Assembly (NCBI GenBank): GCA_976226885.1
Contig: OZ320323.1
Coordinates: 13,578,001-13,642,000 of the forward strand
DNA length: 64,000 nucleotides
DNA from: Iphione sp. A-MEVVRFRX5
Lineage: Eukaryota
Reading direction: 5' to 3'
The number at the start of each line of letters is the position of its first letter. Position 1 is the first letter of the stretch. A model generated the notes under the pieces. That model saw only the letters and a list, made by a program, of their open reading frames with translations, was not told the DNA's origin and did no database searches. A program made the position numbers and the translations under genes. Shown here piece by piece: positions 3,401 to 57,600 of the stretch.

Positions 3401-6400
3401 CCTTCTTCTCCGTCTCCAGTGGAAGGTGGTCTATGAAATGCTCAAGGTACGCCCTGAAAGATTTGTCGATTGCATCTAATCATTCCAAAGGTTTGAAACT
3501 TGAAGGAAAAAACTCCACAAATTACATTGCTGTGGCTATAAACAATGTTGAAAAAAAAGAAAACAAGATTTAAGCAACGGTGTTGGTAGATCATTTTGGA
3601 AAAGTGCTTTCCATAAAAACGGCCACCATCATGATGGAAGATGTAATTTTGCTTCCTTTAATTTTGCAAAAACAAAAACGAAAATAAAGTCTACAACACT
3701 ACCATGGTCTCTTGGATGTAACATACCTGCCAAACTGGGGACAGTGATCCAAATAGTCAGCAGCGACCTGCCATAGACTGCAACAGGAGGTTACAACAGA
3801 ATCAGTTTGAGTGGTGCTGCTTCATGACAAGCCACAAGCTGGCAACTCAGTTAAAGCTGAGTGGATCATGTCACGGATATGGCTAAGCAAGTCTACCTTC
3901 GCACATCGCATGCGAAGGGGAGTGTAATGCGTATGTTTTGGTGCCTGACTGTTGGTCAGTGTGCAAGTACTGTATGTGTAGCAGCCCGTGTCAAGCGAAA
4001 CTGACTGGCTACCTATTTACCGCACAAGAGCATGCAGACAAACTGACATATGTTAATATCTGATTCGTGTCTACAGTCTTCAAGATATGGTATCATCAGG
4101 ACTCCATTGTGGGAGAACATGCTCCGTAAATTTAAGAGCATCAGGTCGAATCCTGATGCCATATTCTCAATCAACGAGTGAAAAAAAGTTCTGTGTTCAA
4201 GCACACAGGACTTGTTGTATCATCACCATCAGCGCCCCTCACCATGCTCATCAAGTCTATGATATAGGGAGAAGGAAATGACAGAATAAAAGAGAAAAAA
4301 AGGCAATACGATACCTTAAAACAACCAAAGATTACGGGGAAAGGTGGACACTAACATTGTGGATGCAGAGATGTAAGGTTGGAGACATACCTTTGATGGG
4401 ACATGAGGCCTGTTGCATATTCTAGGAGGAGAAATTCGCGAAGGTTGGACCCGAAGCTGGAACAGAAGATCAGTTATTCTATTAACTATTCACTGGATGC
4501 TCCTTTCTCAATGCTAAAAAAAGGTTTACTTTCTGGACACTACAGTATCCGACACAAAGGTTCTGGAATCTGAAGTGTCCACACTACAGCCAAAGTGTAT
4601 ACATACAAAGAAGAATACGGTTTGCTCTGTTCGGATTCAAGCAAGATTGCAGAATCGCCTGATAGCTGAGGCGTGTATTTTTTATTTTTTTTTAAACTTT
4701 TATTTACACTGGAGCTGAAATATACAATATGTATTTGGGATCCAGTTTATACCATCTCTTGATACTTGTATGATATTTACAGGTGATCACGACAATATGG
4801 GATGAGATCAATGGTAAGGTGACTCATGGGCTGATGGTGCCAGTTCATAGTGTCGGTCGTGTTGGTGTTCTGAGTACATAATTCCTGACATTACTTGACA
4901 GGATATCATCCTGTTTGAAGATGTGATTTGAAAGGGTATCACCCTTCTTTCATATCAGCTGCTTCGTCACCACTTCCAAGGGAATCTCCCTGTTCGTGGA
5001 TCAGTTACTTCATTACGGTACCCGCAAGTTGGCTTTGACCGAACACTGTAGCCTACGCATTTTCAGTTTACGCAATAATTGTTTCTTTGGGAGATTTGTA
5101 TCGGTTATTGATAGTTTCTTCTTCCAATAGCAACTAAACCTGTACTGTATTGAATCTCTGAAACGTTCCTTGTGAGGAGCATCATACAACATCAGTCCCC
5201 TGCGGTTTCCTTCTCTAGTCATACGTCCCCCTCTATCAGTTCTTTCAGATAGTCGAAAGATCCCTAGGCCAACCCTCACCAACGTTGTGTCTACATAGCT
5301 TCTAACCTCATTTTCCACAATATCCCGGTCTATCCTCCTATTCATTGCAACGGCATATATCCTTCGTCGTAGCGTAACATATTTCATGTATGTGCTAGAT
5401 GTCTGAGAGCTATATAAGAACAGTCCGTAATTTATCACCGACAGTATCATAGTTGTCGCCAGTCTGGTTGCCAAATCTTTGCTCAAGTACTTCCTAATTT
5501 TCACAAAATGCTGCAGTTTATTATACCCTTTATGTACTAGCCTTTGCAAATGGTTTCTATACGATAGTTTCGTGTCCAAGATAATCCCTAAATAATTGAA
5601 TGATTTCACAGTCTCAAGCAGTCGATTGTCATATTTTAGATTCACATCTGTGGTGTTTGTTCGATACCCAAATTTCATAACCTTTGTTTTAGCAATGCTT
5701 ACTTTAATCTTATTGTTGTGGGACCATAGTTTCAGACGATTCATATCATGTTGTAGGCCCTCTATCGCATCATTTAATGTCACTCCGTGAGCAATCAGAA
5801 CCAAGTCATCAGCGTACAATATCACATCTGAGTCTAGTATACTGTGTACTAGGTCATTAATATATATGACAAAGAGCAACGGACCTAAAATTGATCCTTG
5901 CGGCACACCGCACGTAACATCCATGGTACTAGACAGAGTTCCATTAACCTTGGTTATCTGTTTCCGCCCCATCAGGTATGCCTTTATCCACACATAATAA
6001 CTCCCTAGATGGTAGTCCTGTAGCTTCCTTAGTAAAATTTCATGGCACACACTATCGAACGCCTTCTCAAAATCGATGAAAGCCCCCACGACGTGTTCCC
6101 GATTATTCAGATAGCCATGTATTAGTTGATTTAATTTACTGACAGCCATTTCTGTACCACGGCCTCGTCTGAAACCATATTGTTGTCTACAGAACAAATC
6201 ATTATTCTCAAAATGGTCATATTCTAGTGTGGACTATACGTTCTAATACCTTGTTAACCATATTTAGAATGCTAATAGGGCGATAATTACTTGGTTGATT
6301 TGGATCCCCTTTTTTGTATATTGGCGTAACTACAGTACACTCCCTGCCTGCGGACACGTCTCGGAAGCGGACACGTCTACAATGCGGACGATTTTACGCA

Positions 6401-7008
6401 GAACGAAATGATTTGCTATTGTTTCCTATTATAAGCTGACGTCTCTAATGCGGACGGCAAAATTTAGTGAACGCCTCCCTGTGGACGAGGTGTTGTCGCA
6501 CGAATTTGGGGCTCCAGGGAAACCACAGAAGTGCTTTTCAAAGGTAGATATGAATAACCCCTGTGGACGAGGTGTTGTTGCGCGAATTTGGGGCTCCAGG
6601 GAGACTACAGAAGTGCTTTTCAAAGGTAGATATTGATAACCCCTGTGGACGAGGTGTTGTCGCGCGAATTTGGGGCTCCAGGGAGGCTCCAGAAGTCATT
6701 TTTCAAAGGTAGATATGAATAACCCCAGTGGACAAGGTGTTGTCGGGCAAATTTGAGGCTCCAGGGAGGCTCCAGAAGTCATTTTTTAACTGGTCAATTT
6801 CAGTACTTTTAGGACTTTTACTGGTCAAATTCAGTACTTTTAGGACTTTAACTGGTCAAATTCAGGACTTTTAGGACTTTTACTGGTCAAATTCAGTACT
6901 TTTTGGACTTAAACTGATTGAATTAATTTATAGAGAGAGAGGGAGAAAGGGATTTCATTTTCTAGTTTGACCCCTCCTTAGGCGGGCAGATGTGCATGTA
7001 TATCCTTT

Positions 7009-7064
<56 letters not shown>

Positions 7065-10000
7065 GGAGTTCATTTTCTAGTTTGAACCCCTGGTCCGATC
7101 TCCAATGCGGACGCGTCTACAATGCGGACGATTTGAAGCAGAACAGAGGGTGTCCGGAATCAAGAGAGTGTACTGTATTCCCAACTTAAACTCCTCCGGT
7201 ATTATGCCTTGCCATAGGGATTGAGTGAACATGTGCCGGAATACCTCAACGTTTCGTGTCATAAAAATTTTTAATAATGCCGACGGTAATATACTAATCC
7301 CACTCGATTTGTTACCATGCATCGATCTTATCGATTGTAGTACTGTTTCTTTAGTCAACCCTTCATAGTTTAGGCGGCAGTCAATCCTGTTTTCCTGATG
7401 TTTGTAAGGTTCTTTCATATCCTCTAATATTCTCGAACCAACTGTCGCAAAGAAACAGTTTATCTTGTCTGCTGCTTGCTTGTCAGTCATTATTTTCTCA
7501 TCGTCTGATCGCATCAGTATCTCCGTATAAACTTGACTGTAGCCAAAATTCCTTTTTATCACTTGCCAAAAACGGGTTGGATTTGTTTTATTTGCTACCA
7601 ACTCCCCTTCAATATACCCTTTCCTCGATATAGTTAGCTGTTTCCTAACATTGGACATAGCAATGTGATGCTCTAGCTTGCACTCCAACTTACCAGTTTT
7701 GTTGTATTCTTCCCTGATACGATTTCTTTTAGAAATTAATTCGTGTAACTCCCTAGTCATCCAAGGCACTGTCGTTCTGGGGCACCGCCCCGTCTTTACA
7801 GGACATAGTTTATTAACTAGGTGGACTAGGTAGTAGTATATTACATACCAAATTTGTTGTACATCGTTCATTGCTAGTAAGGAGGTTTGCTCGAAGCTAG
7901 TTGATTCCTTAACAAATGTCTCTTCTGTCAGTCGCTTTTTGGATCTATATTTACGCTTCACCCTATCTAGCCGTATACGTGTTTCCAGAGTTATTGTGAT
8001 TTTTCTATGATCACTAAAGCCGCTGTTACTAACATTTATATGTAAATGTTTAGGTAGGATATTTCCCAGGACTAAGTCAATTGTACTTGAGGACAGTTTT
8101 CCTATTCTGGTCAGCTCCGTTACATACTGTGTTAATAGATTCTCAGCAGCAAACTCCTTCAATTTTCTGGTAAAAACGTTAGCTTTGTTTGCCCAATTTA
8201 TGTTATAATCCCCCATTATCAGAATATTAGTACGCCTATTTTCTCCTCGTAATTCAGCAATGTCAGATCTTAATTCTTCTAAGCCCTGTGATACATTCCC
8301 CCGTGGCGGCCTGTATATATTGCCAAGTAGAATCCGTTCATGGTTTTGTTCAATCAATAACCATTGCCTCTCCAAATGTTCCGTTATCTTGCTAGTATTC
8401 GATACGTAATGGGCACTTTCAGATAATTTATTGGTAACGTATATCACCAGCCCCCCTCCTCGTTTACATTTCCTATCCAGACGTATGCATCTATAACCAG
8501 TTATCTCCAGTAAACTCGCAGGTATAGAAGATTGCAACCAGCTCTCACTAAAGAAGTAAATATCAGATTTTGTTGTGTTAATCATGCTCAATAGTTCCTC
8601 CCAGTTCTTGAGAATACTCCGTACATTAAGAATTTCAATATTTAGCGATATCATCTAAAGGATAGCCAAATTGTATGGTCCCACGATGTTAGGCGATGAG
8701 ATGAAAGCCCACCCGGATGAATAAAGTTGAGTGGTCCAAAGAAAAGGAAATCAGTATGCCGTAACATACAGGATAGAAATGACACCCGTTTCACAGCAAT
8801 TTGATGAACACGTGTTCCACCAATAAAAGGACATAGTTAAACAATTGCATCTCATCCACAAATGTAGTATGTGTTGTGGTAACATATATAGCGCACAATC
8901 AACCAGTGTAGCTTCCCCTTTATTTATATAGCACAATATACTGCTAGCGTAACAGGAGAACACAAACAATCAATATAGGGTATTTTCAGTGTCCGAATCA
9001 GTGGATCAAATAACACCAAGTGCAGTAATGTTCTTAGGTACGAGAGTTGTTTGTGCTTACTAAAGCATCATGATCTGAGTTAAACTTCTACTTATCTGAA
9101 TTGTTGTAAGTAGCGGTAGTATAGGTAGTCCTCAAATTCATAGAGTCTGCGTAGAGCGTTCTCAATACGGGTAACCGCTACTGGAACCCATATCGGCCGC
9201 AAATGACACCCATCGCGAAGTCGCGCGTATCGGTGCCTCCATCGTCCATTATGCCGACTGTGGATGGTTCTCATAGTCCAAGGCACAGGTACTCCGTTTG
9301 AGCCGTTCAGCTCCACGATTCTTCTGTTTAGGACGATCACTAGCCTGTTTATCAACAGTTGTATGCGTCGAGCAGAGCCGCCCCTATTCATGTAGCCATT
9401 AAGTTGATAGTTGCTCGTCGCGTAGTCCATACCAAACACCGTCGATATCATTATGTAACTGCCAGGGAACATATTCCTCAGCCTTTCGTAGGCAACCTGA
9501 TAGTCATGCATTATTTCCGATACTGCAGTATCCACCCGTTGGTACCTTGGTATGACATATCGAGTTGTTTGCCTGGGTCCACGAGACCGAAACAAATTTG
9601 TCATGTTATTTCCGCCAACCCATAGCACCACCGCCCACGGTACATATGGGACCAGTGTTCCCTCAAAGCGATTTATCACATCCAATATCCTTGCTCCGGG
9701 ATAGAAGTATACCGACACTCTCCATCTTGGATCTCTATAGTAACCAGCAGTTCCTCTCCCATGGCTGCTAGACAAAATAATTACTCGGCGGACCATTTCT
9801 GAGTTTCTGCGTAGACATGAGTCGCACGTGTGCAGATATGTTCGGTCACCGGCAGTACTGCAATTTCAAATCTCGCGCATGCGTATATTTGTTTTTCAGA
9901 CAACACTGTTCTCATTCAGGCGTAGCCACTCTGGTGTCCGACATCCAAAAATAGCCAGACGCACTATTCTGTTTCCATCTGTGGGTCTGCTGTTCCAATT

Positions 10001-13000
10001 AGGTCCCGCCTGACCTCCTCTAGGAGTTTTCCGAGCATATTTTGTCCAGCATACGTTCCTTCGGTAATACTCTTTGATTGTGCTTCGACACCAACCCCCC
10101 AATAGGGATGCTTGCTTGCCTCAATTATAATATCCTTCCCTGTGGATATAAGTGTCTCGCGCAATTTGTCATTTTGGGCAAACTTGTGTCCCAGTATATC
10201 TTTCATAATGGCACGCTTCTCATCCTTCCACGGTTCACTGCTCTTGATCTGTTTTCTTACTCTCCTGAGTTTTTCGTTATCCGTGGTCTTTTCAATTAAT
10301 TCAGCAAGTTCATTTTTACCATGCTTAGTCGCTTTGGCCCAAGTGTAGGCCTGTTCTGCTGAGCTAAATTCCGTTTCACACCAGTCAATTTTACTGCTAG
10401 TCAAATTCGAGAACGGGGCTCCCTCTCCCTGGACTATCACCTTTCCATCCTTGGCCTGTTGTCTGGCATTAGCCAGGCTGTATTCCTCCGGCAATTTGTC
10501 CAGGGAGTCATAACGATACCATCTTTTATCGATTTCAATACGGTTCTCTCTTAATCTCACTGCCTTTGTTGGGGCAACCTCCTTCACCCTCTTGGCAATC
10601 GCTTGTAGGTCCATTCTCACCTTTCTCTCTTCAGGCGTTTCATCGTTGTTGAGCCAAATTTCTCTTCCTTTGAGTTTTCCTCTTGCTGCCATCACTTTCT
10701 CTTTCGCACACATTCTGGTAAATCGTACAAACATCCCTCGTCTTCCACCTTTGTCCTTTTTCGTTGTTCTGTACGCCAGATCAATGTCATACTCATATAT
10801 GTCAGTGCCCATGGTATCAAATAGGGCAACGCACATAGCCACACACGATTCCCCAGGTATTTCGTCAAGTCCATCAATGTATAGATTGTACTTGCGATTA
10901 AGGCGGTCACGACTAGTCTTACTTGCCCGAGTGTTGTCGGGGGCAACTTCTTTTCCAGATATCATTATAGCTGACATCATTTCCGCTTTAAGCTTCTTGT
11001 TTTCTGCTTTGAGGTTATCAACCTCACGCCGTAGTGCAGCAATCTCGCTGGTATTGTTTTTGACTGTATCCACTGTACTTTTGAGTGTTTCGTTCACTTC
11101 CTTCACCTCCTCTCTGATGCGTTTTGAGATATCGATCTGCTCTTGTGAGCTACGTTGCAACTCAGCAAACATCTCCTCCATAGATAGCGGGCCGCTTGAC
11201 CTTTTGTTATCAGTTCCATTTCCCGCATCACTGCGTACAGTGTCTTCACCTGTGTCATTTGGCCCCCGTGGGCGTTTCCTAGATGTTGAACGGCGGCGGT
11301 CGGAGGCACTTACACTATCAAGGTCTCTTCTTGGGCGTTCTGCAGTTTCCATCCTTATCAGGTTGTATTCACATATACACCTAAGCGATTTCGCGGTGAA
11401 TGTTTCCACAGACTGTGTGTACTAGAGCGTGCTGCTGTCCGTAGGTACCCTTCTATTTATAGCACATTCAACGTCTCTACGTGTGCACCGGTGGGCCCTG
11501 CGCAGGTAACATTTGAAAGTTACTCAATTATCGCTTTCTTCAACAAACTTTCCTTTACCTCAGGCAAACGTGCGTTATTAGCACTTTTCTTACCGTCAGG
11601 CCAGTCACATTGAGTTAAACTTGGTATTCACGGTTTTTGTTTTGTCCGGCAATTCTTATAAAATGTAATGCTCACCTTCTTGTCTGCGAGCGGTGATCGG
11701 GACAACCGTACTCACCTAGGCGCCATTGATACCGGCGCATTCGCTAACGCCCCGGGCGCCGGCGGCCGACAGGGTCGTCTCGCCCAGCGCGCAAGCGCCT
11801 AGCGTGCCGGTAGTGGTTGACCCTACTGAGTCACCACAGGCAGCTACCACAGGTATCATGGACACACCAACAGACACAGTACTGAGGGAGCATTCTACCA
11901 CCTCTGTACTGGTCTGTTTAGTCTTTTTAGCAGATCTACCAGAGGAAGATCTCTTGCCTCTCTTCTGCTGCCTGGGCTGCTCTACTGGCATGCCCATGAT
12001 AGAGGAGGCCAAGTCCATGATACCACAAATACAAAAGCAATAAACACAAAATCAACAAAGCAAAGTTGAAAAAATACTCCCTTTGGTGATCCTGATAGCA
12101 ATAGAAATAGCAGAAAGAAAGAACAGTGACAGAACAGTAAGAATTCTAAGACAGGTCTGAACTGGGTGACTGCTAGACTAAAAGTGACAACAACCAAGAT
12201 GGCTGACTGTGGTGGCGCCACTGGGCTGTATCTCAGGGAGACACCTAGTGTCCTATGCTGGTACTAAAGTTTTGTTCTGTCTAGAGTCTTTTAAAGATTC
12301 TGGGATCTCTCCTATTGTGAAGGTCTATATGCATGGGAATATGAGGCTTTGTCAGGTTCTTGGGTCTCCCTAAAAGCCAAGAGGTGTGCAGAGAAATATA
12401 ATGCTTTGTCCCATTAGCATTCAATACAAACTACTAAACGATACATTTAAGATATAATCACTTACTTCAGTGTTTGCGACTCCAGCATATCACAGTGATG
12501 CAACAGGTCTGTCAGGTGAGCCACAAACCACCAGCTCCCGCAACTCGAGCTGAATTAATAACATAAAACAAATCTTGAATCATATGACAATTCTTCTTCA
12601 TTATATATGTTAACTTATAACCCAAATAAAAAGGGTCTTACACTTATTTCATGACGATGTTATTTTCAAAACAATGCTAGAATGTTTGCCTACCGACCTA
12701 TACTCAAACAAATCTGACAGGAGGGCAAAATGAATGAGAAAACTATAGGATACCACTGTCTATCGAAGGACACGGGCACTGGGTGATTTGGTAAGTGGCA
12801 TTCCTAACCCACCTGGCCTCCTTGATAACCTGATGAATGTCAAACTCGAGTGTAGCCAGCAGGATGTGGTCCCAAGCCTGTAGATGGGCACTGCCACCGT
12901 ACGCATTGATGCAGAACTGGGCGTGGTACTGGACATCGATGGCCTTCACGGATGGGTTGTGGTAGAGTAGGCGTGTCACCAGCATGCAATACCAGCTGCC

Positions 13001-16000
13001 ACACAGGTCACGGAGCTCCATCAGAACCTGGTCCTCACCACACAGGATCTTCACGAATAAATAAAGCAATAGGATCAACAGCATGAACTGTAGTGTGAAA
13101 CCAGCTGACATAATAAAACCTGTCAGAAACCAGTAGATTGATATAAAACTGACATAAGCATGTAGCAAGGAAATATTTCTTATCGGAGATATGAAAACAT
13201 ATGTAAAAAGATATATACTTGAGGTTATAAAAATGTTGAGAGCATAAGAAAATATCATTGACCTAGTGAATGACTCTCATGTTAGAAGAAATATTATCCA
13301 GCCTTGAGCAACTCAGTCAAACACTAGTCCTCTCTCCAAACATCTGATTATGGACAATGTACCTGTAACACTTGGCACATGTACCCATCTAAAATTCTTA
13401 GGGTAGTCAACTTTTCGAAAACAACTAAAAACAAAATAGTTCAGATCACACTTAAATAAAGGCCTAAACTGATCCCATACCCGGCATATTGTTTGCAGTT
13501 TTTTGTCCACAGCAAAGACACCACTACTATATTCTGTCATGCACTCCTCCTGCCAGTGTCTCCACTTCATCTGGAACTCTCCCATGGACTGCCCGTTGAA
13601 CAGCTGTCAAACATAAGGAGTTTCATTTCATTCATTTATTAAAAACACATCGGAACTCAACTTATCTCTACCAGCTTTCTTTTCTAATTGTTTATTTTGT
13701 TGTAATTGTCAACTATGATTCCACTTCTATCTGAAATTCTGCCGTCCATCGCTGTTTGAGCAGCTGTCAATTCCATGTGTCAGATGCTTCATTTTATTGT
13801 ATTATCTAGAACAGAAAAGTTGTATCTACCGTGAATACTCCTCTTTTCTGTACCGGTCAACATCACTCCTTACATGTAATGTTCTTATGAACCTGCATCA
13901 TTTACTTACTGCAAAGAGAGGCATCTTTCTCAGTAAGGTGTCCATGACAACATGAGCATCAGATCCTGCACTTGCATGACGTGACAACATCTTCCTGGCC
14001 TCCTCCACGCGTCCTTGGAGAACATAGCAGTATATCTATAGGGTGGAAATGAAACACATATGATAAACGCGTAGACTGTCTTAACTATAAAATCAAATTC
14101 TAAACTGTAACGCTCCCTGCACAGATACTCCCCATATCCCTAAGTGAGACCAGGCACAGGTCACAATTTGCCTTCACAGATGAGAAATACCTTCGAGCCC
14201 ACTGACTACTCCCCTTATCAACACAGTCCCTACTCAACCACACCAACGGAGACCATAGTCATTATTTCTCATCTGTAAGAAGGAGGACCTTCTGTGACCA
14301 TATTATCACTAAGTAATTATAGTTCTGCTCCAGTCTCTTCTGGGGTTTATTCCAATGGTGAGTAATAGAACCTAAACACTGGTTTACATGTATATTGGTA
14401 GAACGTCAGTATAATAGACGATCTATGAAGGCAAATGATTCAAGCGACTCTGTACATCCGTGAACCTGATTTATCACGTTAGGAAACTCACCGCGTCCCA
14501 GTAGCTGGGATGATCTTGTGGTGGATCATGTTCGATGGCCTGCTTTGCAAGATGCTCGCCCTCCAAAAAGTGCCAACGCATCCATTCCAGAAGCTGCCCC
14601 AATACAGAGCCACCTGGGAGGGGAAAAAATGCTCATACAGTCAGACCTCAAGTAATCGAATCTCCTGTGTTTCCAGTGATCTTCTCGGGTTAACAAAGCA
14701 GTCAGATAATTCACACGTGAAAATTCATGAAAATGGTTATGCTGTGAAAATTCATCCAGATAACTCTGTAAATCCAGATATAGGATGATGATGTTTGACT
14801 GCATATAGTGTACAGTGTTTCCTTTATTTTTCATTATGGCCATGGGGCGTTTAATACCTAATTGTCCTTTAATTTTCACTAAATTGATCCTTACTGCTAC
14901 GGTGCTATTCGTGTGTTTTATTTGACTAGATGTTCCTACTATTTCTGTGAAGAGTAAGGTAGACAATACTATGGGAATGGTACAATGTTGAGATCTTAAT
15001 ATAGCGTAATAATATACAATATCCTTGCGGCAGTCAATTTAACATTCCTAAGACCATATTACAGAGGAACATTTGTTTTAAGCCAAAAGTTCAATAACTA
15101 ATGCTTTTTTCACGCGATATCATTTAGAAATTCACATACTAGGCTGAACATCAATGAAGAGAATCTCTGCCAGACTCCAAACAAGTTCTGTCATATCAAA
15201 CAACTGAAGCTGTGCCTCGTAGTCGTACTTCTCTGTGCATCCATCCTGGTCACTCTTTTCTGTAAACAACACAAAATGACACTCACTAATCATATTTGTT
15301 AGTAACTAGTGAAAATTGGTGGAGCTCTCTCTAGAAGAAACACCTGTAAATATGTAACCAGACCATTACCAGACACCTCCAAATCCATCTAGTCTTATCT
15401 GGCTCCACATACTCTATTAACAACAGTAAACAGAGATACATAAGAGTCAGACTCACTTGAGGCAGTTTGCAGGTCCATTAAACAAGCTTTGATGACAGAG
15501 CGATACTCTCGACTGAACTTGACAAGCCTAAAATAAAACATTGAGATAAGCAACTACTAAGGACAAATTAGAAGTATAACTAATAGTAATACGTTATCAT
15601 TTTTGTGAATTAGACAATGCTCATTTTGATTTTAGCTGTATTTATGACTTATAAAATCTTAATATTTGTTCCTTTCATACAACAGCACACTTACTGAGCT
15701 TTTTCCAGGCTACTTGAAGCTTGTGGTGAACATTTTTGAAGTTTTAAAAATATATCTGAAAATGGATGGAAGGGTAAAATCTTATGTGGAGATGTTTTGT
15801 AGGTATGTGACTATATATGACCTGTTACAAGAATATGAATGTCAATACATGTACTGTTTAATGTGCCTTTCCTTATCTGTCTTAGATAAAACACTCTGAA
15901 AAGAACATTTTTTTTCCAAACTGGACTACATTTTGTTTTGTATGATTGTACTACTTATTCCAATGTACTATCCACCATACTTTAAGGTGAATGGACCTAT

Positions 16001-18394: not shown

Positions 18395-44873
<26,479 letters not shown>

Positions 44874-54692: not shown

Positions 54693-57600
54693 CTACACCG
54701 ACCATTTGGACTTCTGAGCCTGGATATCACTTCTGAGGTTCTGGGCAAAGCAAATGCCAAGAATCTGCGGGAGAAAAAAGAGAAAAGGCAAACCAAATCA
54801 TATGACCTATCAACACAAAAATTAACAGTGGAAAGCATCTGGATCACGGTAGTGATTCGCTATCTAACGTCATGCCGGTGTAAATTAATCAGTACACGTG
54901 GAATGGCAAGGGTCAATAATGAAAGCAAAATGATCTATTGCGAGGCATCACTGGGAAAGGTCAGGGGGGAAACATGCTGAAATAGAAGTGCAAGAATGGT
55001 AATCGGTACTGAATTAAACTAAACATTTTAAATAAATTCTGAAGCAAGCGACAATGGTTTCAAGCTCCAGGTTTCCAATTGAAAGTTTTGTTCTAGTTTT
55101 TTAAAGACGTAATTTGTATGATTTTCGCACGAAAACATTAATAATCTGAACCATGATTCAAACTACCATAAAGAAGATACACGTTTATCTACGATGTTCA
55201 TCGTCAGATAAAATGATGTTCTGGGGATATATATTTTTGGGACTTGGTACAACAAGTTAACAATTTGGAGTGAGCTCAAACTTTTATGAATGGGAATGAG
55301 AAGTTAGTAAATAAGGAGGAGTATTTGCCTCTACTCTTGAGAACTTCATTCAAATCATGCAGCAGGAAATACTGAAACAATGGTACACAGCAAGACTCAC
55401 ACACACAGACAGAGAACGAGTCACAATGTGGACAGTTTCCATGATGCCAATTCCATCCGTTTGTCTAGTAATGGCCACTTAAGATTACGAATCAGAATTC
55501 AAGTAGCGTTTCTTCAGAACAGAAGGCTGTCTGCATTGTGACATTCTACAGTAGACACATCTAATAAAGAAAACAGGGAGTTTAATGCGAGAAAGGAACA
55601 CAACTAAGCCACAAGGTGTTAGCGTGGGAGGACGGACAACGATTACACTCGTCTCCTTGACAGTTGCGGGACCAAAAGCACCGAGTGATAGAGAACACAT
55701 TTTCGTCTTCTTTTTTTAAATTTATAGACGTGAGCAATGAACGTGATGAGGGTTCTTGTTTGAGTTAACCCATTACTTTGTCAATCGGCGGTGGAGTTCT
55801 GCTCTCTCTCTCTCCCTCTCTCTCTCTCTCTCTTGACTACCCCCTCTGTGACAGTATGTCACTGCGCAGGTTTGTACCGAAACATATGCCAAGAATCTGT
55901 GAGGAAAGGGAGGTAAAAGGCAAGACGGGGGTTATTCAGTGTGTCCCGTCACCTGGAGACGACAAGCATACGTGTCTCGTCGAGGAGGTCGGGGATTCAT
56001 TGGTTCAGAAGATGCTTCCTTTCTCCTGTGCTGACACTTATTCTGGGTACGACTTAAGATTGTGTCTAGGAAAACAATACAGGTTCGCTACAGATAACAA
56101 AATATCAGAAACCCAAAAGGACCAAAATTCGAAAAAAAAGGAGACATCAAGCAAGAAAAAGAGCAAAGCCATCCAAACAAAAAAAGGGCCTAGGTTTCCC
56201 AGTGAGTTTGATATATGTAATCACTGGTACACTAGATACAGCGGAGACTGTCTGCATCGTTGTGAATTGGCATGTTCGTGGTAGATGGAGGGGGAACACC
56301 AATAGCGTGGAAGATTTCACCAAAAAAAAAGTAAGCAAGTACTTCTCACAAGATCAACGCCCTCCTTATTCCTTTAAATATTTATGTTTGAGACACCGAA
56401 CAAGACACTTTGAGCGTCCATTGGTGGGGAGCTCGCTGCATATGAACCAAGAGTAAACTACTGTATCAACCTTCGTTTCTGTAACTGGTACTGAGATAAT
56501 CACCTTACCATTCAATCTCATTCATATACATTTGTTATCGAGCAATCAAGATCGGAGACCATTATACATCGCATATTTTGACGATAAGAAATAAAAATGT
56601 CAATCAATCTACAATCAAGAGTTCACTGCTGCTACAGGCAAAAGAAACACACCTTCTAGATCATTAGCCCTCCCCCGAAGGTCACTCACTTTACGCTTTG
56701 GACTTCTGGGGCCTTAGGTAGGTATTTCCTACATCCCTTCAGTGTTCCCATTTTCTAAAATTAAAACTACGTGAAAAGCTACATACTGTATAGACACAGT
56801 GTAACCACTACCACCTCGGATGTCCGTCAGTTTACAAAAACAATTCAAAGTGTGTGTTTGTGTGTGATTCGGGGGGATGGGGGGGGGGACACAAAGTAAA
56901 GAAGTGACACAGGAGGGAATAAAAATGCTCCGTCTTTACCGTTCAGCTCTGGGTGGGGACATTGGAACAAAACTCTTTGAGTATGTCTGAGGCTGGGGGC
57001 ATATCCAATCTAGCAATGCCTGAGAGTAGAAGGGGCTGACTGTATATATAAACATGTCTAGTCATAGTAGAGCTAAACAAAGCCTATAAATTCACTTGGA
57101 AAATGTCATGTATACATGAATATATATACATGAACATATATATATATATATATATATATATGTAATATTCACACCTGCCCTGTATGGTAACGTACTAAAA
57201 TATCCACCAGGCTAGCACAATGTCCTAAGTTTAATTAACCTATACATTGTTGACTTTAGGTGCTGTACATGTCATTGTATGGAACGCCCTGCAAAGAGTA
57301 TAGTATAGAGAAGAGATACTCCTTAACTTTACAGAATGGCTTCCTTTTTTTGTTTTGTTTTTTTTGTAGAACTTGAGCTGCCCATTTCCTAAATGGATGG
57401 ATGGATAAGCACTGTAGAATTTTGTCATCTCGTGACCCCCCCAACAACAAGCAATTTGGCAGTTCTGCTCACCCACTAACACGGAGAGGCGTTCTCACAG
57501 GACCGTGACGCTCTGCCTCAAATGTAGTACACTGAGAAACAACCTATCCCACAGTCCTGAAAGGGGAACCCCCCTAATACTACTGACCTGAAGTATACAC

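What the first reader, a model, noticed from the sequence alone, without database searches (positions are those of the whole stretch)
4678..12230. Four-ORF non-LTR retrotransposon: ORF0 / ORF1-NADAR / SGNH / APE-RT
Seen: four co-oriented ORFs separated by non-coding spacers of ~170-440 nt, ending in AATAAA plus an A-tail. Established: LINEs normally carry one or two ORFs, and in CR1/L2-group elements the esterase is typically part of ORF1. Inference: this is a LINE organised like a small multi-gene genome, combining RNA chaperone, ADP-ribose-related hydrolase, esterase and RT modules. ORF1 and the SGNH ORF are stop-free, consistent with a fairly recent insertion. I do not know of a described family with this layout but cannot search to confirm that.
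Basis: partly seen in the sequence, partly recalled or inferred. Interest (0 to 1): 0.9.

Follow-up and report, generated by a model that had tools for sequence, protein, structure and literature searches.

The report
Three-gene LINE with NADAR and esterase
This is a young copy of a poly(A)-tailed jumping gene (a LINE) that carries three genes instead of the usual one or two: an RNA-binding protein fused to a NADAR (ADP-ribose-removing type) enzyme, a stand-alone esterase, and the endonuclease/reverse transcriptase. The same gene order recurs in distant relatives, so the layout is real, but the proposed fourth gene ("ORF0") is not supported.

Summary
The element is real and lies on the minus strand (about 11.8 kb down to 4,678). 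Three of the four ORFs are genuine.

- **ORF1** (9964-11409) is an L1-type ORF1p (coiled coil, RRM, CTD) fused to a NADAR domain (Pfam 2e-27, catalytic E/K/E conserved).
- **The middle ORF** (9092-9796) has an SGNH-hydrolase fold with Ser/Asp/His present.
- **ORF2** (8654 to 5013) encodes APE and RT. It is broken by an 847-bp TA-flanked TIR element (6331-7177) and one frameshift.
- **The 3' end** has AATAAA and a short A-tail ending at 4678.

The order ORF1-NADAR / SGNH / APE-RT recurs in at least seven very divergent families (about 20-35% amino-acid identity) from two other sequence sources. This rules out chance juxtaposition. Two related families lack the SGNH ORF. All relatives with readable 3' ends are poly(A)-tailed.

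"ORF0" has no homologue, relatives show no conserved upstream ORF, and it straddles a sharp CpG boundary near 11,810. It is probably a chance ORF.

NADAR in LINE ORF1 has one passing mention in the literature (Repbase oyster "Tx1" families, 2025). I found no description of the three-ORF layout. I rate it a new variant of a known kind. The RT clade is unassigned, and Repbase/Dfam could not be checked.

The parts
4678..4693 (-). Short A-rich tail (A9-T-A6) marking the 3' end of the element
   Evidence: Read directly from the sequence. Relatives end in AATAAA plus 10-19 A.
4699..4704 (-). AATAAA polyadenylation signal
   Evidence: The same signal lies just before the tail in L013, L014 and L015.
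4694..5012 (-). 3' UTR, about 320 nt
   Evidence: It lies between the ORF2 stop (5013) and the tail. Relatives have 0.17-0.64 kb.
5013..6197 (-). ORF2 piece 3: RT core, thumb and C-terminal domain (394 codons)
   Evidence: RVT_1 E=7.6e-31. It aligns to L003 ORF2 residues 555-850 at 34% identity, E=7e-53. No CCHC motif.
6217..6330 (-). ORF2 piece 2: the start of the RT domain, in a different frame from piece 3 (frameshift near 6200-6235)
   Evidence: RVT_1 N-terminus. tblastn frame 2 versus frame 3. Sequence read.
6331..7177 (.). Foreign insertion in ORF2: an 847-bp element with 15-nt terminal inverted repeats (TACAGTACACTC...) and TA on both sides (Tc1/mariner-like MITE). It carries 82-bp x3.7 and 31-bp x4.3 tandem repeats, (CT)25, and 46-bp subterminal direct repeats.
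   Evidence: It replaces the junction between L003 ORF2 residues 514 and 518.
7178..8654 (-). ORF2 piece 1: ATG, APE endonuclease and the linker up to the RT domain
   Evidence: Exo_endo_phos_2 E=1.6e-9 and Exo_endo_phos 3e-3. It aligns to L003 ORF2 residues 34-514 and to ORF2 of L008-L011.
8655..9091 (-). Spacer 2 (437 nt). It is T-rich and not depleted of ATG.
   Evidence: Relatives have 0.37-1.85 kb here. No conserved ORF or sequence was found.
9092..9796 (-). Stand-alone SGNH/GDSL-fold esterase gene (234 aa). It has Ser11, Gly34, Asn63 and Asp195-x-x-His198, and no coiled coil.
   Evidence: Homologues occupy the same position in seven other families.
9797..9963 (-). Spacer 1 (167 nt)
   Evidence: In relatives this ranges from a 41-nt overlap to about 300-500 nt.
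9964..11409 (-). ORF1. Its likely ATG is at 11352. Layout: disordered N-terminus, long coiled-coil helix (residues 77-172), RRM plus CTD (about 175-320), then a NADAR domain (333-473).
   Evidence: Pfam NADAR 2e-27. AF2 pLDDT 85.7. Foldseek hits 8bau and 2b3w (NADAR) and 2yko (L1 ORF1p trimer). Catalytic E352, K359 and E430 are conserved.
11410..11810 (-). Probable 5' UTR / internal promoter region. It is CpG-rich (o/e 0.9-1.3). The upstream limit is inferred from the composition boundary only.
   Evidence: Relatives have 145 nt to about 320 nt upstream of ORF1.
11716..12221 (-). 'ORF0' candidates (11716-12018 and 11982-12221). Probably not a gene and largely outside the element.

Best explanation
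The locus is one recent insertion of an APE-type, poly(A)-tailed LINE that belongs to a large, little-described lineage. The insertion lies beside a Nup85 exon, on the same strand, so it is probably intronic.

What is shown: the lineage's ORF1 protein is an L1-like coiled-coil/RRM/CTD protein with a C-terminal NADAR domain of the YbiA family. In this family and in at least seven others, a second accessory gene for a roughly 230-aa stand-alone SGNH-fold esterase sits between ORF1 and ORF2. The unit is therefore tricistronic: ORF1-NADAR / SGNH / APE-RT.

What is inferred about how it works:
- The element is transcribed from a CpG-rich 5' UTR, polyadenylated at AATAAA, and copied into the genome by target-primed reverse transcription by ORF2p.
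- ORF1p multimerises through its coiled coil and coats the RNA. That holds the NADAR enzyme on the RNP.
- My preferred guess is that NADAR removes base-linked ADP-ribose, the guanine-N2 linkage that all tested NADARs hydrolyse on DNA and RNA, from the element's RNA or cDNA. This would be a counter-measure to host nucleic-acid ADP-ribosylation, analogous to phage orphan NADARs.
- The SGNH protein probably plays the lipid/membrane-associated role proposed for the esterase ORF1p of ZfL2-1. Here it is supplied as a separate polypeptide alongside, not instead of, an RNA-binding ORF1p.
- Translation of ORF2 after a long, ATG-rich spacer probably needs internal entry or a separate transcript.

This particular copy is dead for ORF2 (a MITE insertion plus a frameshift), while ORF1 and the SGNH gene remain intact.
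For: Domains.

Conserved gene order at about 20-35% amino-acid identity:
- L002, L008, L009, L010 and L011/L012.
- L014 and L015, which have full-length ORF2 of 964 and 995 aa.

ORF1 family size: exhaustive HMMER gave 1430 hits at E<=1e-10. All but about six of the best 150 cluster representatives align in a single stretch that begins upstream of the NADAR domain, in the coiled-coil/RRM/CTD part, and runs through NADAR. All 51 aligned members hit NADAR.

Catalytic residues:
- NADAR: E352 in 50/51, K359 in 45/51, E430 in 48/51. Their roles are taken from PMC11543638 and PMC11125620.
- SGNH: D195 and H198 invariant, S11 in at least 90% of 42 sequences.

Mobility of the lineage: five copies 99.8% identical, with poly(A) tails of different lengths and unrelated flanks, in L003-L007. 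AATAAA plus poly(A) is also present in L013-L015.

Youth of this copy: CpG o/e is mostly about 0.6-1.2 inside the element (lower within the MITE), against a window median of 0.54 and 0.10-0.28 immediately upstream. Only two lesions were found in ORF2.

NADAR activity on guanine-ADPr in DNA and RNA, and phage orphan NADARs: PMC11543638, PMC11833690, PMC11825919.

Esterase/lipid model: PMC3905857.
Against: - No second copy of this exact family could be found. There is none in the window, the SGNH protein is not on record, and the JGI metagenome scans were empty. The 5' end, TSD and copy number of this family are therefore unknown.
- No RNA or protein evidence for any of the genes is available here.
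- The SGNH ORF is below Pfam's cutoff by sequence. ZfL2-1's esterase was not among the top 50 structural matches, so common descent with known LINE esterases is not shown.
- In L015 the nucleophile Ser and the acid Asp are replaced. Catalysis may therefore not be the conserved function.
- The physiological substrate of animal NADARs is unknown (PMC11125620). The counter-defence role is pure inference.
- The trees do not resolve whether the SGNH gene was gained once or lost repeatedly.
Confidence: 0.85

Rival explanations
1. Chance juxtaposition. A host NADAR gene, a host SGNH gene and a truncated LINE, or nested insertions of different elements, happen to lie head to tail.
For: No TSD was found and there is only one copy in the window. 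The spacers are long and non-coding.
Against: The same order and orientation recur in at least seven other families at about 20-35% identity from two other sources. The ORF1 part upstream of NADAR has the L1 ORF1p fold. CpG content is mostly uniformly high from 11808 to the tail. All SGNH homologues found are stand-alone ORFs of about 230 aa on such contigs.
Confidence: 0.02
2. The element really has four genes. ORF0 (11716-12018) encodes a small protein and the 5' end lies near 12.1-12.2 kb. A 9-nt match, GCTATCAGG at 12099 and 4666, would then be the TSD.
For: A 100-codon ATG ORF on the sense strand occurs in only 2.5% of shuffles.
Against: About 0.5 such 9-mers are expected by chance in the space searched (my estimate). 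There is no homologue of ORF0 in any relative and no Pfam hit. Relatives have only 145-320 nt upstream of ORF1, with no conserved ORF. The antisense strand is equally open. The ORF crosses a boundary from CpG-free to CpG-rich DNA at about 11,810.
Confidence: 0.08
3. The NADAR domain works in RNA processing for the element itself, not in counter-defence. Possible roles are removing an ADP-ribose- or NAD-derived group from RNA ends or intermediates, or a YbiA-like N-glycosidase activity.
For: The authors of PMC12477816 suggest processing of RNA intermediates. YbiA is an N-glycosidase (cited in PMC11543638). The catalytic residues are conserved.
Against: [quoted passage not shown] No LINE is known to need such a step (my own knowledge).
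Confidence: 0.3
4. The SGNH-fold protein acts non-catalytically, for example as an RNA- or lipid-binding scaffold like the non-catalytic SGNH-like domain of Oskar, rather than as an esterase.
For: L015 has Asp in place of the nucleophile Ser and Asn in place of the acid Asp. In most relatives block III reads GICD rather than GxND. Only the window copy reaches even a weak Pfam hit. Oskar is aligned as a non-catalytic SGNH protein in PMC3905857.
Against: D195 and H198 are invariant and S11 is at least 90% conserved in 42 sequences. The window protein has all four blocks.
Confidence: 0.25

Closest known systems
Esterase-type (type IV) ORF1p LINEs: ZfL2-1, CR1, L2, RTEX (PMC3905857, PMC4120745)
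   Same: These are LINEs that carry an SGNH-fold esterase with a conserved catalytic triad upstream of an APE-RT ORF2.
   Different: In those elements the esterase IS ORF1p. It is preceded by a coiled coil, and the class lacks RNA-binding domains. Here the esterase is a separate second gene without a coiled coil, downstream of an RNA-binding-type ORF1p. No sequence or top-50 structural link to the ZfL2-1 esterase was seen. CR1/L2 elements end in short repeats, not poly(A) (PMC13343379).
L1-type (type II) ORF1p: coiled coil, RRM, CTD (PDB 2yko)
   Same: The predicted fold of ORF1 residues about 77-320 matches the human L1 ORF1p trimer (E=1e-6, TM 0.60, about 190 columns).
   Different: There is no Pfam Transposase_22 hit in any of 51 members. 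A NADAR enzyme is fused at the C-terminus. ORF2 of relatives lacks the L1/Tx1 CCHC motif.
Repbase 'Tx1' LINE families of Crassostrea gigas with NADAR in ORF1 (mentioned in PMC12477816)
   Same: A YbiA-family NADAR domain in a LINE ORF1 protein.
   Different: I could not obtain those sequences. It is unknown whether they are the same lineage or whether they carry the SGNH ORF. The ORF2 hallmarks examined here do not look L1/Tx1-like.
Ectocarpus Gypsy elements with NADAR at the N-terminus of Pol (PMC12477816)
   Same: A retroelement that has acquired a YbiA-family NADAR domain.
   Different: That is an LTR retrotransposon with NADAR in Pol, in a brown alga. The domain is most similar to bacterial NADARs.
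Bdelloid rotifer LTR retrotransposons and Athena PLEs with a GDSL esterase ORF3 (PMC5408684)
   Same: A stand-alone GDSL/SGNH ORF carried as an extra gene by a retroelement.
   Different: These belong to different retroelement classes, and the ORF lies after pol. They were judged to be independent captures from the LINE esterases.
Phage orphan NADARs (gp30.3) that neutralise DarT1 (PMC11825919, PMC11125620)
   Same: A mobile genetic parasite that carries a NADAR hydrolase. This is the model for the counter-defence hypothesis.
   Different: Those are bacterial viruses, the NADARs are free-standing, and they have a His-type catalytic residue. No cognate host ADP-ribosyltransferase is known for the LINE.

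Membership tests
APE-type non-LTR retrotransposon (LINE) | APE endonuclease followed by a reverse transcriptase in one ORF | tested here: met
   Exo_endo_phos_2 E=1.6e-9 and RVT_1 E=7.6e-31. The ORF is colinear with the intact 964-aa ORF2 of L003.
APE-type non-LTR retrotransposon (LINE) | 3' end defined by a poly(A) or short-repeat tail, with no LTRs or TIRs | tested here: met
   AATAAA plus an A9TA6 tail. Relatives have 10-19 A.
APE-type non-LTR retrotransposon (LINE) | Multiple dispersed copies with common 3' ends, variable 5' truncation and TSDs | tested here: inconclusive
   No other copy of this family was accessible and no TSD was found. The related family L003-L007 shows five 99.8% identical copies in unrelated flanks.
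NADAR superfamily, YbiA family | Match to PF08719 above the gathering score, and the YbiA fold | tested here: met
   96.8 bits against a cutoff of 35.1. Foldseek hits 8bau (E=3e-8, TMt 0.72) and 2b3w.
NADAR superfamily, YbiA family | Catalytic Glu and Lys, plus a Glu in the last strand (the YbiA-family signature) | tested here: met
   E352, K359 and E430 are present in the window protein and in 50, 45 and 48 of 51 relatives. The residue definitions come from PMC11543638 and PMC11125620. The positional equivalence is inferred from motif spacing and from the HMMER alignment to 8bau and 2b3w.
NADAR superfamily, YbiA family | Hydrolysis of base-linked ADP-ribose | not testable with these tools
   This needs an enzyme assay.
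SGNH/GDSL hydrolase | SGNH fold | tested here: met
   AF2 pLDDT 89.7, pTM 0.86. There are 35 PDB matches at E<=1e-3, all SGNH/GDSL enzymes or design scaffolds with the same fold, with TM 0.33-0.69.
SGNH/GDSL hydrolase | Pfam family score above the gathering threshold | tested here: not met
   Lipase_GDSL_2 scores 21.2 bits against 32.9. The relatives give no hit.
SGNH/GDSL hydrolase | Block I Ser, block II Gly, block III Asn, block V Asp-x-x-His | tested here: met
   The window protein has S11, G34, N63 and D195/H198. Relatives mostly have Cys at the block III Asn position, and L015 lacks the Ser and the Asp.
Type II (L1-like) ORF1p | Coiled coil, then a single RRM, then a CTD | tested here: met
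   The AF2 model has a helix at 77-172 followed by alpha/beta domains. Foldseek to 2yko/2ykp/2ldy gives E=1e-6 to 5e-5. Pfam Transposase_22 was not detected.
L1 / Tx1 clade | Cys-rich CCHC motif at the ORF2 C-terminus | tested here: not met
   No CCHC pattern was found in the intact ORF2 of L003, L013, L014 or L015. None is visible in the translated C-terminal frame of the window copy.
L1 / Tx1 clade | RT groups with L1/Tx1 references in a phylogeny | not testable with these tools
   No labelled reference RTs (Repbase/Dfam) were available. As weak indicators only, the window APE gave no PDB sequence hit although L1-EN is in the PDB, and L003 ORF2 versus L1 ORF2p reaches only E=1e-14 over the RT.
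CR1 group (CR1/L2/Rex1 and others) | ORF2 C-terminal tail motif of the type ...Y.G...WN.LP....FK..L | tested here: met
   The motif is present in L003, L013, L014 and L015, and is recognisable in the window copy. That it is typical of CR1/L2-group ORF2 is my own knowledge, not a tool result.
CR1 group (CR1/L2/Rex1 and others) | 3' end made of short tandem repeats rather than poly(A). Poly(A) is reported only for ORF1-less Zenon. | tested here: not met
   AATAAA plus poly(A) is present in the window copy and in all relatives with 3' ends. The rule is taken from PMC13343379.
CR1 group (CR1/L2/Rex1 and others) | RT groups with CR1-group references in a phylogeny | not testable with these tools
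   No labelled reference set was available.

The most novel reading that the evidence does not exclude
A widespread animal LINE lineage carries a catalytically intact NADAR on its RNA-coating protein because host cells ADP-ribosylate the bases of retroelement RNA or cDNA as a restriction mechanism. Candidate host enzymes are pierisin/CARP-1-like or other ADP-ribosyltransferases. The LINE's NADAR would then be a eukaryotic counterpart of phage anti-DarT NADARs. It would also follow that many 'animal NADARs' listed in surveys are in fact transposon genes. The separate SGNH gene, kept together with an RNA-binding ORF1p, would show that the esterase function complements the chaperone function of ORF1p rather than replacing it.
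Probability: 0.2. Interest if true: 0.85.

Novelty: new variant of a known kind. Interest (0 to 1): 0.6.

Why it matters
LINE accessory proteins are poorly understood. The esterase-type ORF1p has been treated as an alternative to the RNA-binding ORF1p, with the missing function perhaps supplied in trans (PMC3905857). Here both are encoded in cis as separate genes, and the arrangement is conserved over deep divergence. That makes the question of what the esterase adds directly testable.

The NADAR fusion ties retrotransposition to nucleic-acid ADP-ribosylation. In that field the roles of animal NADARs are explicitly unknown (PMC11125620). The fusion also suggests that a good share of metazoan NADAR sequences are transposon-borne: at least about 140 clusters at 50% identity show the ORF1-NADAR architecture.

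The long, ATG-rich spacer before ORF2 poses a translation problem that differs from the L1 termination/re-initiation model.

Tried and rejected
- **Word-indexed search with whole ORF1** gave nothing. It was probably swamped by coiled-coil words. The exhaustive HMMER search recovered the family.
- **RT piece search** gave only hits of 41% identity or less, with uninformative names. Its best hit, L001, is a truncated RT-only fragment.
- **Exact look-up of the window's SGNH protein** found no record. A 20-mer scan and a pattern scan of JGI metagenomes were empty.
- **TSD search** gave only a chance-level 9-mer.
- **Spacers and 5' UTRs** showed no similarity or shared ORF between families. There was no ATG depletion, so simple scanning or re-initiation is unlikely.
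- **2A-like NPGP motif**: none found.
- **Rfam on the window**: nothing. No tRNA-like part in the ORF2 insert.
- **APE ORF against PDB sequences**: no hit.
- **Trees of ORF1 and the ORF2 N-terminus** are unresolved. The window element is a very long branch, so gain versus loss of the SGNH gene cannot be decided.
- **Nucleotide comparison between families** is too divergent to delimit the elements.
- **Apparent 15-nt TSDs in L004 and L007** turned out to be host tandem repeats.
- **Host organisms** of the samples and of the window could not be identified. The accession numbers appear in no paper. The Nup85 exon is only roughly half identical to human and Xenopus NUP85 by eye.
- **Human sequence**: no contig here looked human. 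The N run at 29922-30095 was left untouched.
- **Literature**: nothing was found on NADAR/DUF1768 in LINEs other than PMC12477816, and nothing on a separate SGNH ORF in a LINE.

Full report
**What is in the sequence**

The feature lies on the minus strand. Reading 5' to 3' along that strand, the ORF listing gives the following:
- A 481-codon ORF at 11409-9964. It opens with a GTG, and the first ATG is at 11352.
- A 167-nt spacer.
- A 234-codon ORF at 9796-9092.
- A 437-nt spacer.
- A 525-codon ORF at 8654-7077.
- Further downstream, a 46-codon piece (6357-6217) and a 394-codon piece (6197-5013).

The Pfam assignments are:
- NADAR to the C-terminus of the first ORF (E=2e-27, above the gathering score).
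- A sub-threshold GDSL-lipase match to the second ORF (E=4.6e-4).
- The LINE endonuclease family to the third ORF (1.6e-9).
- RVT_1 to the last pieces (7.6e-31).

The 3' end reads AATAAA (4704-4699) followed by A9-T-A6, ending at 4678.

I aligned the intact 964-aa ORF2 of a relative (L003) to the window.
- Residues 34-514 match 8630-7185.
- Residues 518-582 match 6330-6121 in another frame.
- Residues 555-850 match 6221-5337.

The gap is an 847-bp foreign element at 6331-7177. It has 15-nt terminal inverted repeats (TACAGTACACTC...) with TA on both sides. It contains internal 82-bp and 31-bp tandem repeats, a (CT)25 run and 46-bp subterminal direct repeats. This is a Tc1/mariner-like MITE. A frameshift lies near 6200-6235. 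ORF1 and the SGNH ORF are intact.

**ORF1 protein**

An AlphaFold2 model built on 51 homologues has mean pLDDT 85.7. It shows:
- a disordered N-terminus (residues 1-75);
- one long helix (77-172);
- alpha/beta domains (about 175-320);
- a compact C-terminal domain (333-473).

Foldseek against the PDB returns two kinds of match:
- The NADAR structures 8bau (E=3e-8, TM 0.72 on the target) and E. coli YbiA.
- The human L1 ORF1p trimer 2yko/2ykp and its RRM-CTD fragment (E=1e-6 to 5e-5, about 190 aligned columns).

ORF1p is therefore a type II (L1-like) coiled-coil/RRM/CTD protein with a NADAR enzyme fused to its C-terminus.

The residues reported as catalytic in NADARs are a Glu, a Lys seven residues later, and the YbiA-family Glu in the last strand (PMC11543638, PMC11125620). 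They correspond to E352, K359 and E430. These are present in 50, 45 and 48 of 51 family members.

**SGNH protein**

The AF2 model built on 42 homologues has pLDDT 89.7 and pTM 0.86. Its 35 best PDB matches at E<=1e-3 are SGNH/GDSL hydrolases or design scaffolds with the same fold. They include acylhydrolases, sialate O-acetylesterases and acetyl-xylan esterase. PAF-acetylhydrolase follows just outside that cutoff (ranks 36 and 38).

The window protein has Ser11, Gly34, Asn63 and Asp195-x-x-His198. D195 and H198 are invariant, and S11 is at least 90% conserved in the family. It has no coiled coil.

The ZfL2-1 esterase was not among the top matches, and there is no sequence-level link to it. Whether this gene shares ancestry with the known LINE esterases is open.

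**Do the genes travel together?**

An exhaustive HMMER search with ORF1 found 6320 proteins at E<=1e-3 and 1430 at E<=1e-10. All but about six of the best 150 cluster representatives align in one stretch that begins upstream of the NADAR domain, in the coiled-coil/RRM/CTD part, and runs through NADAR.

I fetched the DNA around several of them.
- **Logan contigs.** Those from runs ERR14368249/ERR14368245 (L002, L008, L009, L010, L011/L012) each show ORF1-NADAR (449-638 aa), then an ORF of about 230 aa, then a 0.7-1.1 kb spacer and an APE-RT ORF wherever the contig reaches that far.
- **The middle ORF is homologous to the window's SGNH ORF.** tblastn gives E=2e-7 to 3e-13, and the profile gives E down to 1e-113.
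- **Long genomic contigs.** Two from another assembly (ERZ25767047: L014, L015) show the same three-gene order with full-length ORF2 of 964 and 995 aa. Their middle ORFs match the SGNH profile at 6.5e-33 and 2e-31.
- **Profile search.** A search with the SGNH alignment found 46 proteins of 132-305 aa, most about 230 aa, all from Logan assemblies.

Pairwise identity between these families and the window is about 20-35% for every gene. The families cannot be aligned at the DNA level. The shared layout is therefore old and maintained, not a local accident.

Two related families are two-gene elements without the SGNH ORF.
- L003-L007 are five copies, 99.8% identical, 4.9 kb long, with a 145-nt 5' UTR and poly(A) tails of 10-17 A.
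- L013 is the second such family.

Trees of ORF1 and of the ORF2 N-terminus are too poorly resolved to distinguish a single gain from repeated loss. The window element is a very long branch.

**ORF0**

The evidence for it is one item: a sense ATG-ORF of at least 100 codons appears in only 2.5% of dinucleotide shuffles of 11410-12230. The evidence against it is stronger.
- The antisense strand is open for 107 codons over the same stretch.
- There is no Pfam match and no homologue in any related locus.
- No conserved sequence or ORF lies upstream of ORF1 in relatives. Their 5' regions are 145 to about 320 nt.
- There is a sharp compositional break. CpG dinucleotides are dense from the tail up to 11808 (o/e mostly about 0.6-1.3, lower within the MITE). 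Then there is not one CpG between 11809 and 12215, even though the window background is 0.54.

The simplest reading is that a young, CpG-rich element begins near 11.81 kb. On that reading ORF0 (12018-11716) runs across the junction, and the 79-codon ORF (12221-11982) lies outside it. No TSD could be found to settle this.

**Surroundings**

An exon matching nucleoporin Nup85 lies at 12743-13258 on the same strand (Pfam 2.4e-15). It matches human and Xenopus NUP85 in the PDB at E=6e-20 and 1e-16, and I judge it roughly half identical by eye. The element is therefore probably an intronic, sense-oriented insertion in a non-human animal genome.

NADAR orthologues are reported absent from vertebrates (PMC11833690). 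This makes an invertebrate host likely, but I could not identify the organism.

**Which LINE clade?**

I had no labelled reference RTs, so no clade is assigned. Three indicators speak against L1/Tx1.
- No CCHC motif occurs in any intact ORF2 of the lineage.
- The window APE gave no sequence hit in the PDB, although the L1 endonuclease is there.
- L003 ORF2 matches human L1 ORF2p only at 1e-14, and only over the RT.

The ORF2 C-terminus carries a '...Y.G...WN.LP....FK..L' tail. I recognise this as typical of CR1/L2-group elements (own knowledge). However, every member ends in AATAAA plus poly(A), which within the CR1 group is reported only for ORF1-less Zenon (PMC13343379).

One paper (PMC12477816) states that Repbase ORF1 proteins of several Crassostrea gigas 'Tx1' families appear to contain YbiA-family NADAR domains. 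I could not compare them.

**Mechanism: what is shown and what is inferred**

Shown:
- the domain content;
- the conserved gene order;
- conserved catalytic residues;
- recent mobility of a sister family;
- the youth and the lesions of this copy.

Inferred:
- Retrotransposition proceeds by target-primed reverse transcription.
- ORF1p multimerises and coats the RNA, placing NADAR on the RNP.
- NADAR hydrolyses base-linked ADP-ribose on the element's RNA or cDNA. Every NADAR tested removes ADP-ribose from guanine in DNA and RNA (PMC11543638, PMC11125620, PMC11833690). Phages use orphan NADARs against DarT1 (PMC11825919). Guanine-specific DNA ADP-ribosyltransferases exist in butterflies and clams (cited in PMC11543638). 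A counter-defence role is therefore plausible, but untested.
- The esterase may act at membranes, as proposed for ZfL2-1 (PMC3905857). In L015 the nucleophile and the acid are substituted, so a non-catalytic role cannot be excluded.
- The spacer before ORF2 is long (0.37-1.85 kb), T-rich and not ATG-depleted in all members. This argues against simple re-initiation.

**Novelty**

LINE esterases have been known since 2003, and type II ORF1p is well known. NADAR in LINE ORF1 has one passing mention, in 2025.

In the searchable literature I found no description of a LINE that encodes both an RNA-binding ORF1p (with NADAR) and a separate esterase gene. I also found no description of the size of the ORF1-NADAR lineage. 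Repbase and Dfam could not be searched, so prior cataloguing remains possible. I class it as a new variant of a known kind.

Noticed in passing
window 6331-7177: An 847-bp non-autonomous TIR element (15-nt TIRs TACAGTACACTC..., TA flanks) inserted in ORF2. It contains 82-bp x3.7 and 31-bp x4.3 tandem repeats, (CT)25 and 46-bp subterminal direct repeats. No other copy is in the window.
   Followed up: partly
window 12743-13258 (minus strand): An exon of a Nup85 nucleoporin gene (Pfam 2.4e-15; E=6e-20 to human NUP85 residues 283-365). The LINE sits just downstream on the same strand, presumably in the next intron.
   Followed up: partly
window 11809-12215: A 407-nt stretch with no CpG at all (GC about 0.43), directly abutting the CpG-rich 5' region of the element. 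It is far below the window background (median o/e 0.54). Positions 12202-12269 resemble 2158-2224 (78%). Its origin is unexplained.
   Followed up: partly
window 11710-11716: The stop codon of the 100-codon 'ORF0' is followed immediately by GTGAGT, a consensus splice-donor-like sequence. No matching exon or gene was identified.
   Followed up: no
window 31574-35393 (minus strand): A second retroelement-like cluster of long ORFs (299, 656 and 338 aa). The 656-aa ORF has a weak RVT_1 match (3.5e-10). It is unrelated to the finding by BLAST.
   Followed up: no
window 29922-30095: A run of 174 N (assembly gap or mask), left untouched.
   Followed up: no
window 20650-20721 and 55797-55833: (AG)n/(CT)n microsatellites that match the dinucleotide run inside the ORF2 insert.
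   Followed up: no
proteins P0127, P0152, P0203, P0262, P0275 (hits): Large proteins with 3-5 tandem NADAR domains and no RRM part. These appear to be cellular multi-NADAR proteins, distinct from the LINE ORF1 family.
   Followed up: partly
L015:9538-10203 and L014:9678-10361: SGNH-like middle ORFs of two 3-ORF relatives. L015 has Asp for the nucleophile Ser and Asn for the catalytic Asp. L014's N-terminal part lacks an ATG. These may be inactive or non-catalytic versions.
   Followed up: partly
L003-L015, between the last accessory ORF and ORF2: Every member of the lineage, including the two-ORF ones, has a long (0.37-1.85 kb), T-rich spacer before ORF2 that is ATG-rich rather than ATG-poor. 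No sequence is conserved between families.
   Followed up: partly
L004 and L007, about 9600-9856 and after the tails; L003 about 9830-9856: Copies of the two-ORF relative sit inside host tandem repeats (142-bp and 55-bp periods). They carry extra nucleotides or a short duplication of the element's first 23 nt at the 5' junction.
   Followed up: partly
L008:317-2113, L009:302-2128, L011:277-1965: In these families ORF1 continues for 150-200 residues beyond the NADAR domain. The extension has no Pfam match. In the window protein NADAR is C-terminal.
   Followed up: no
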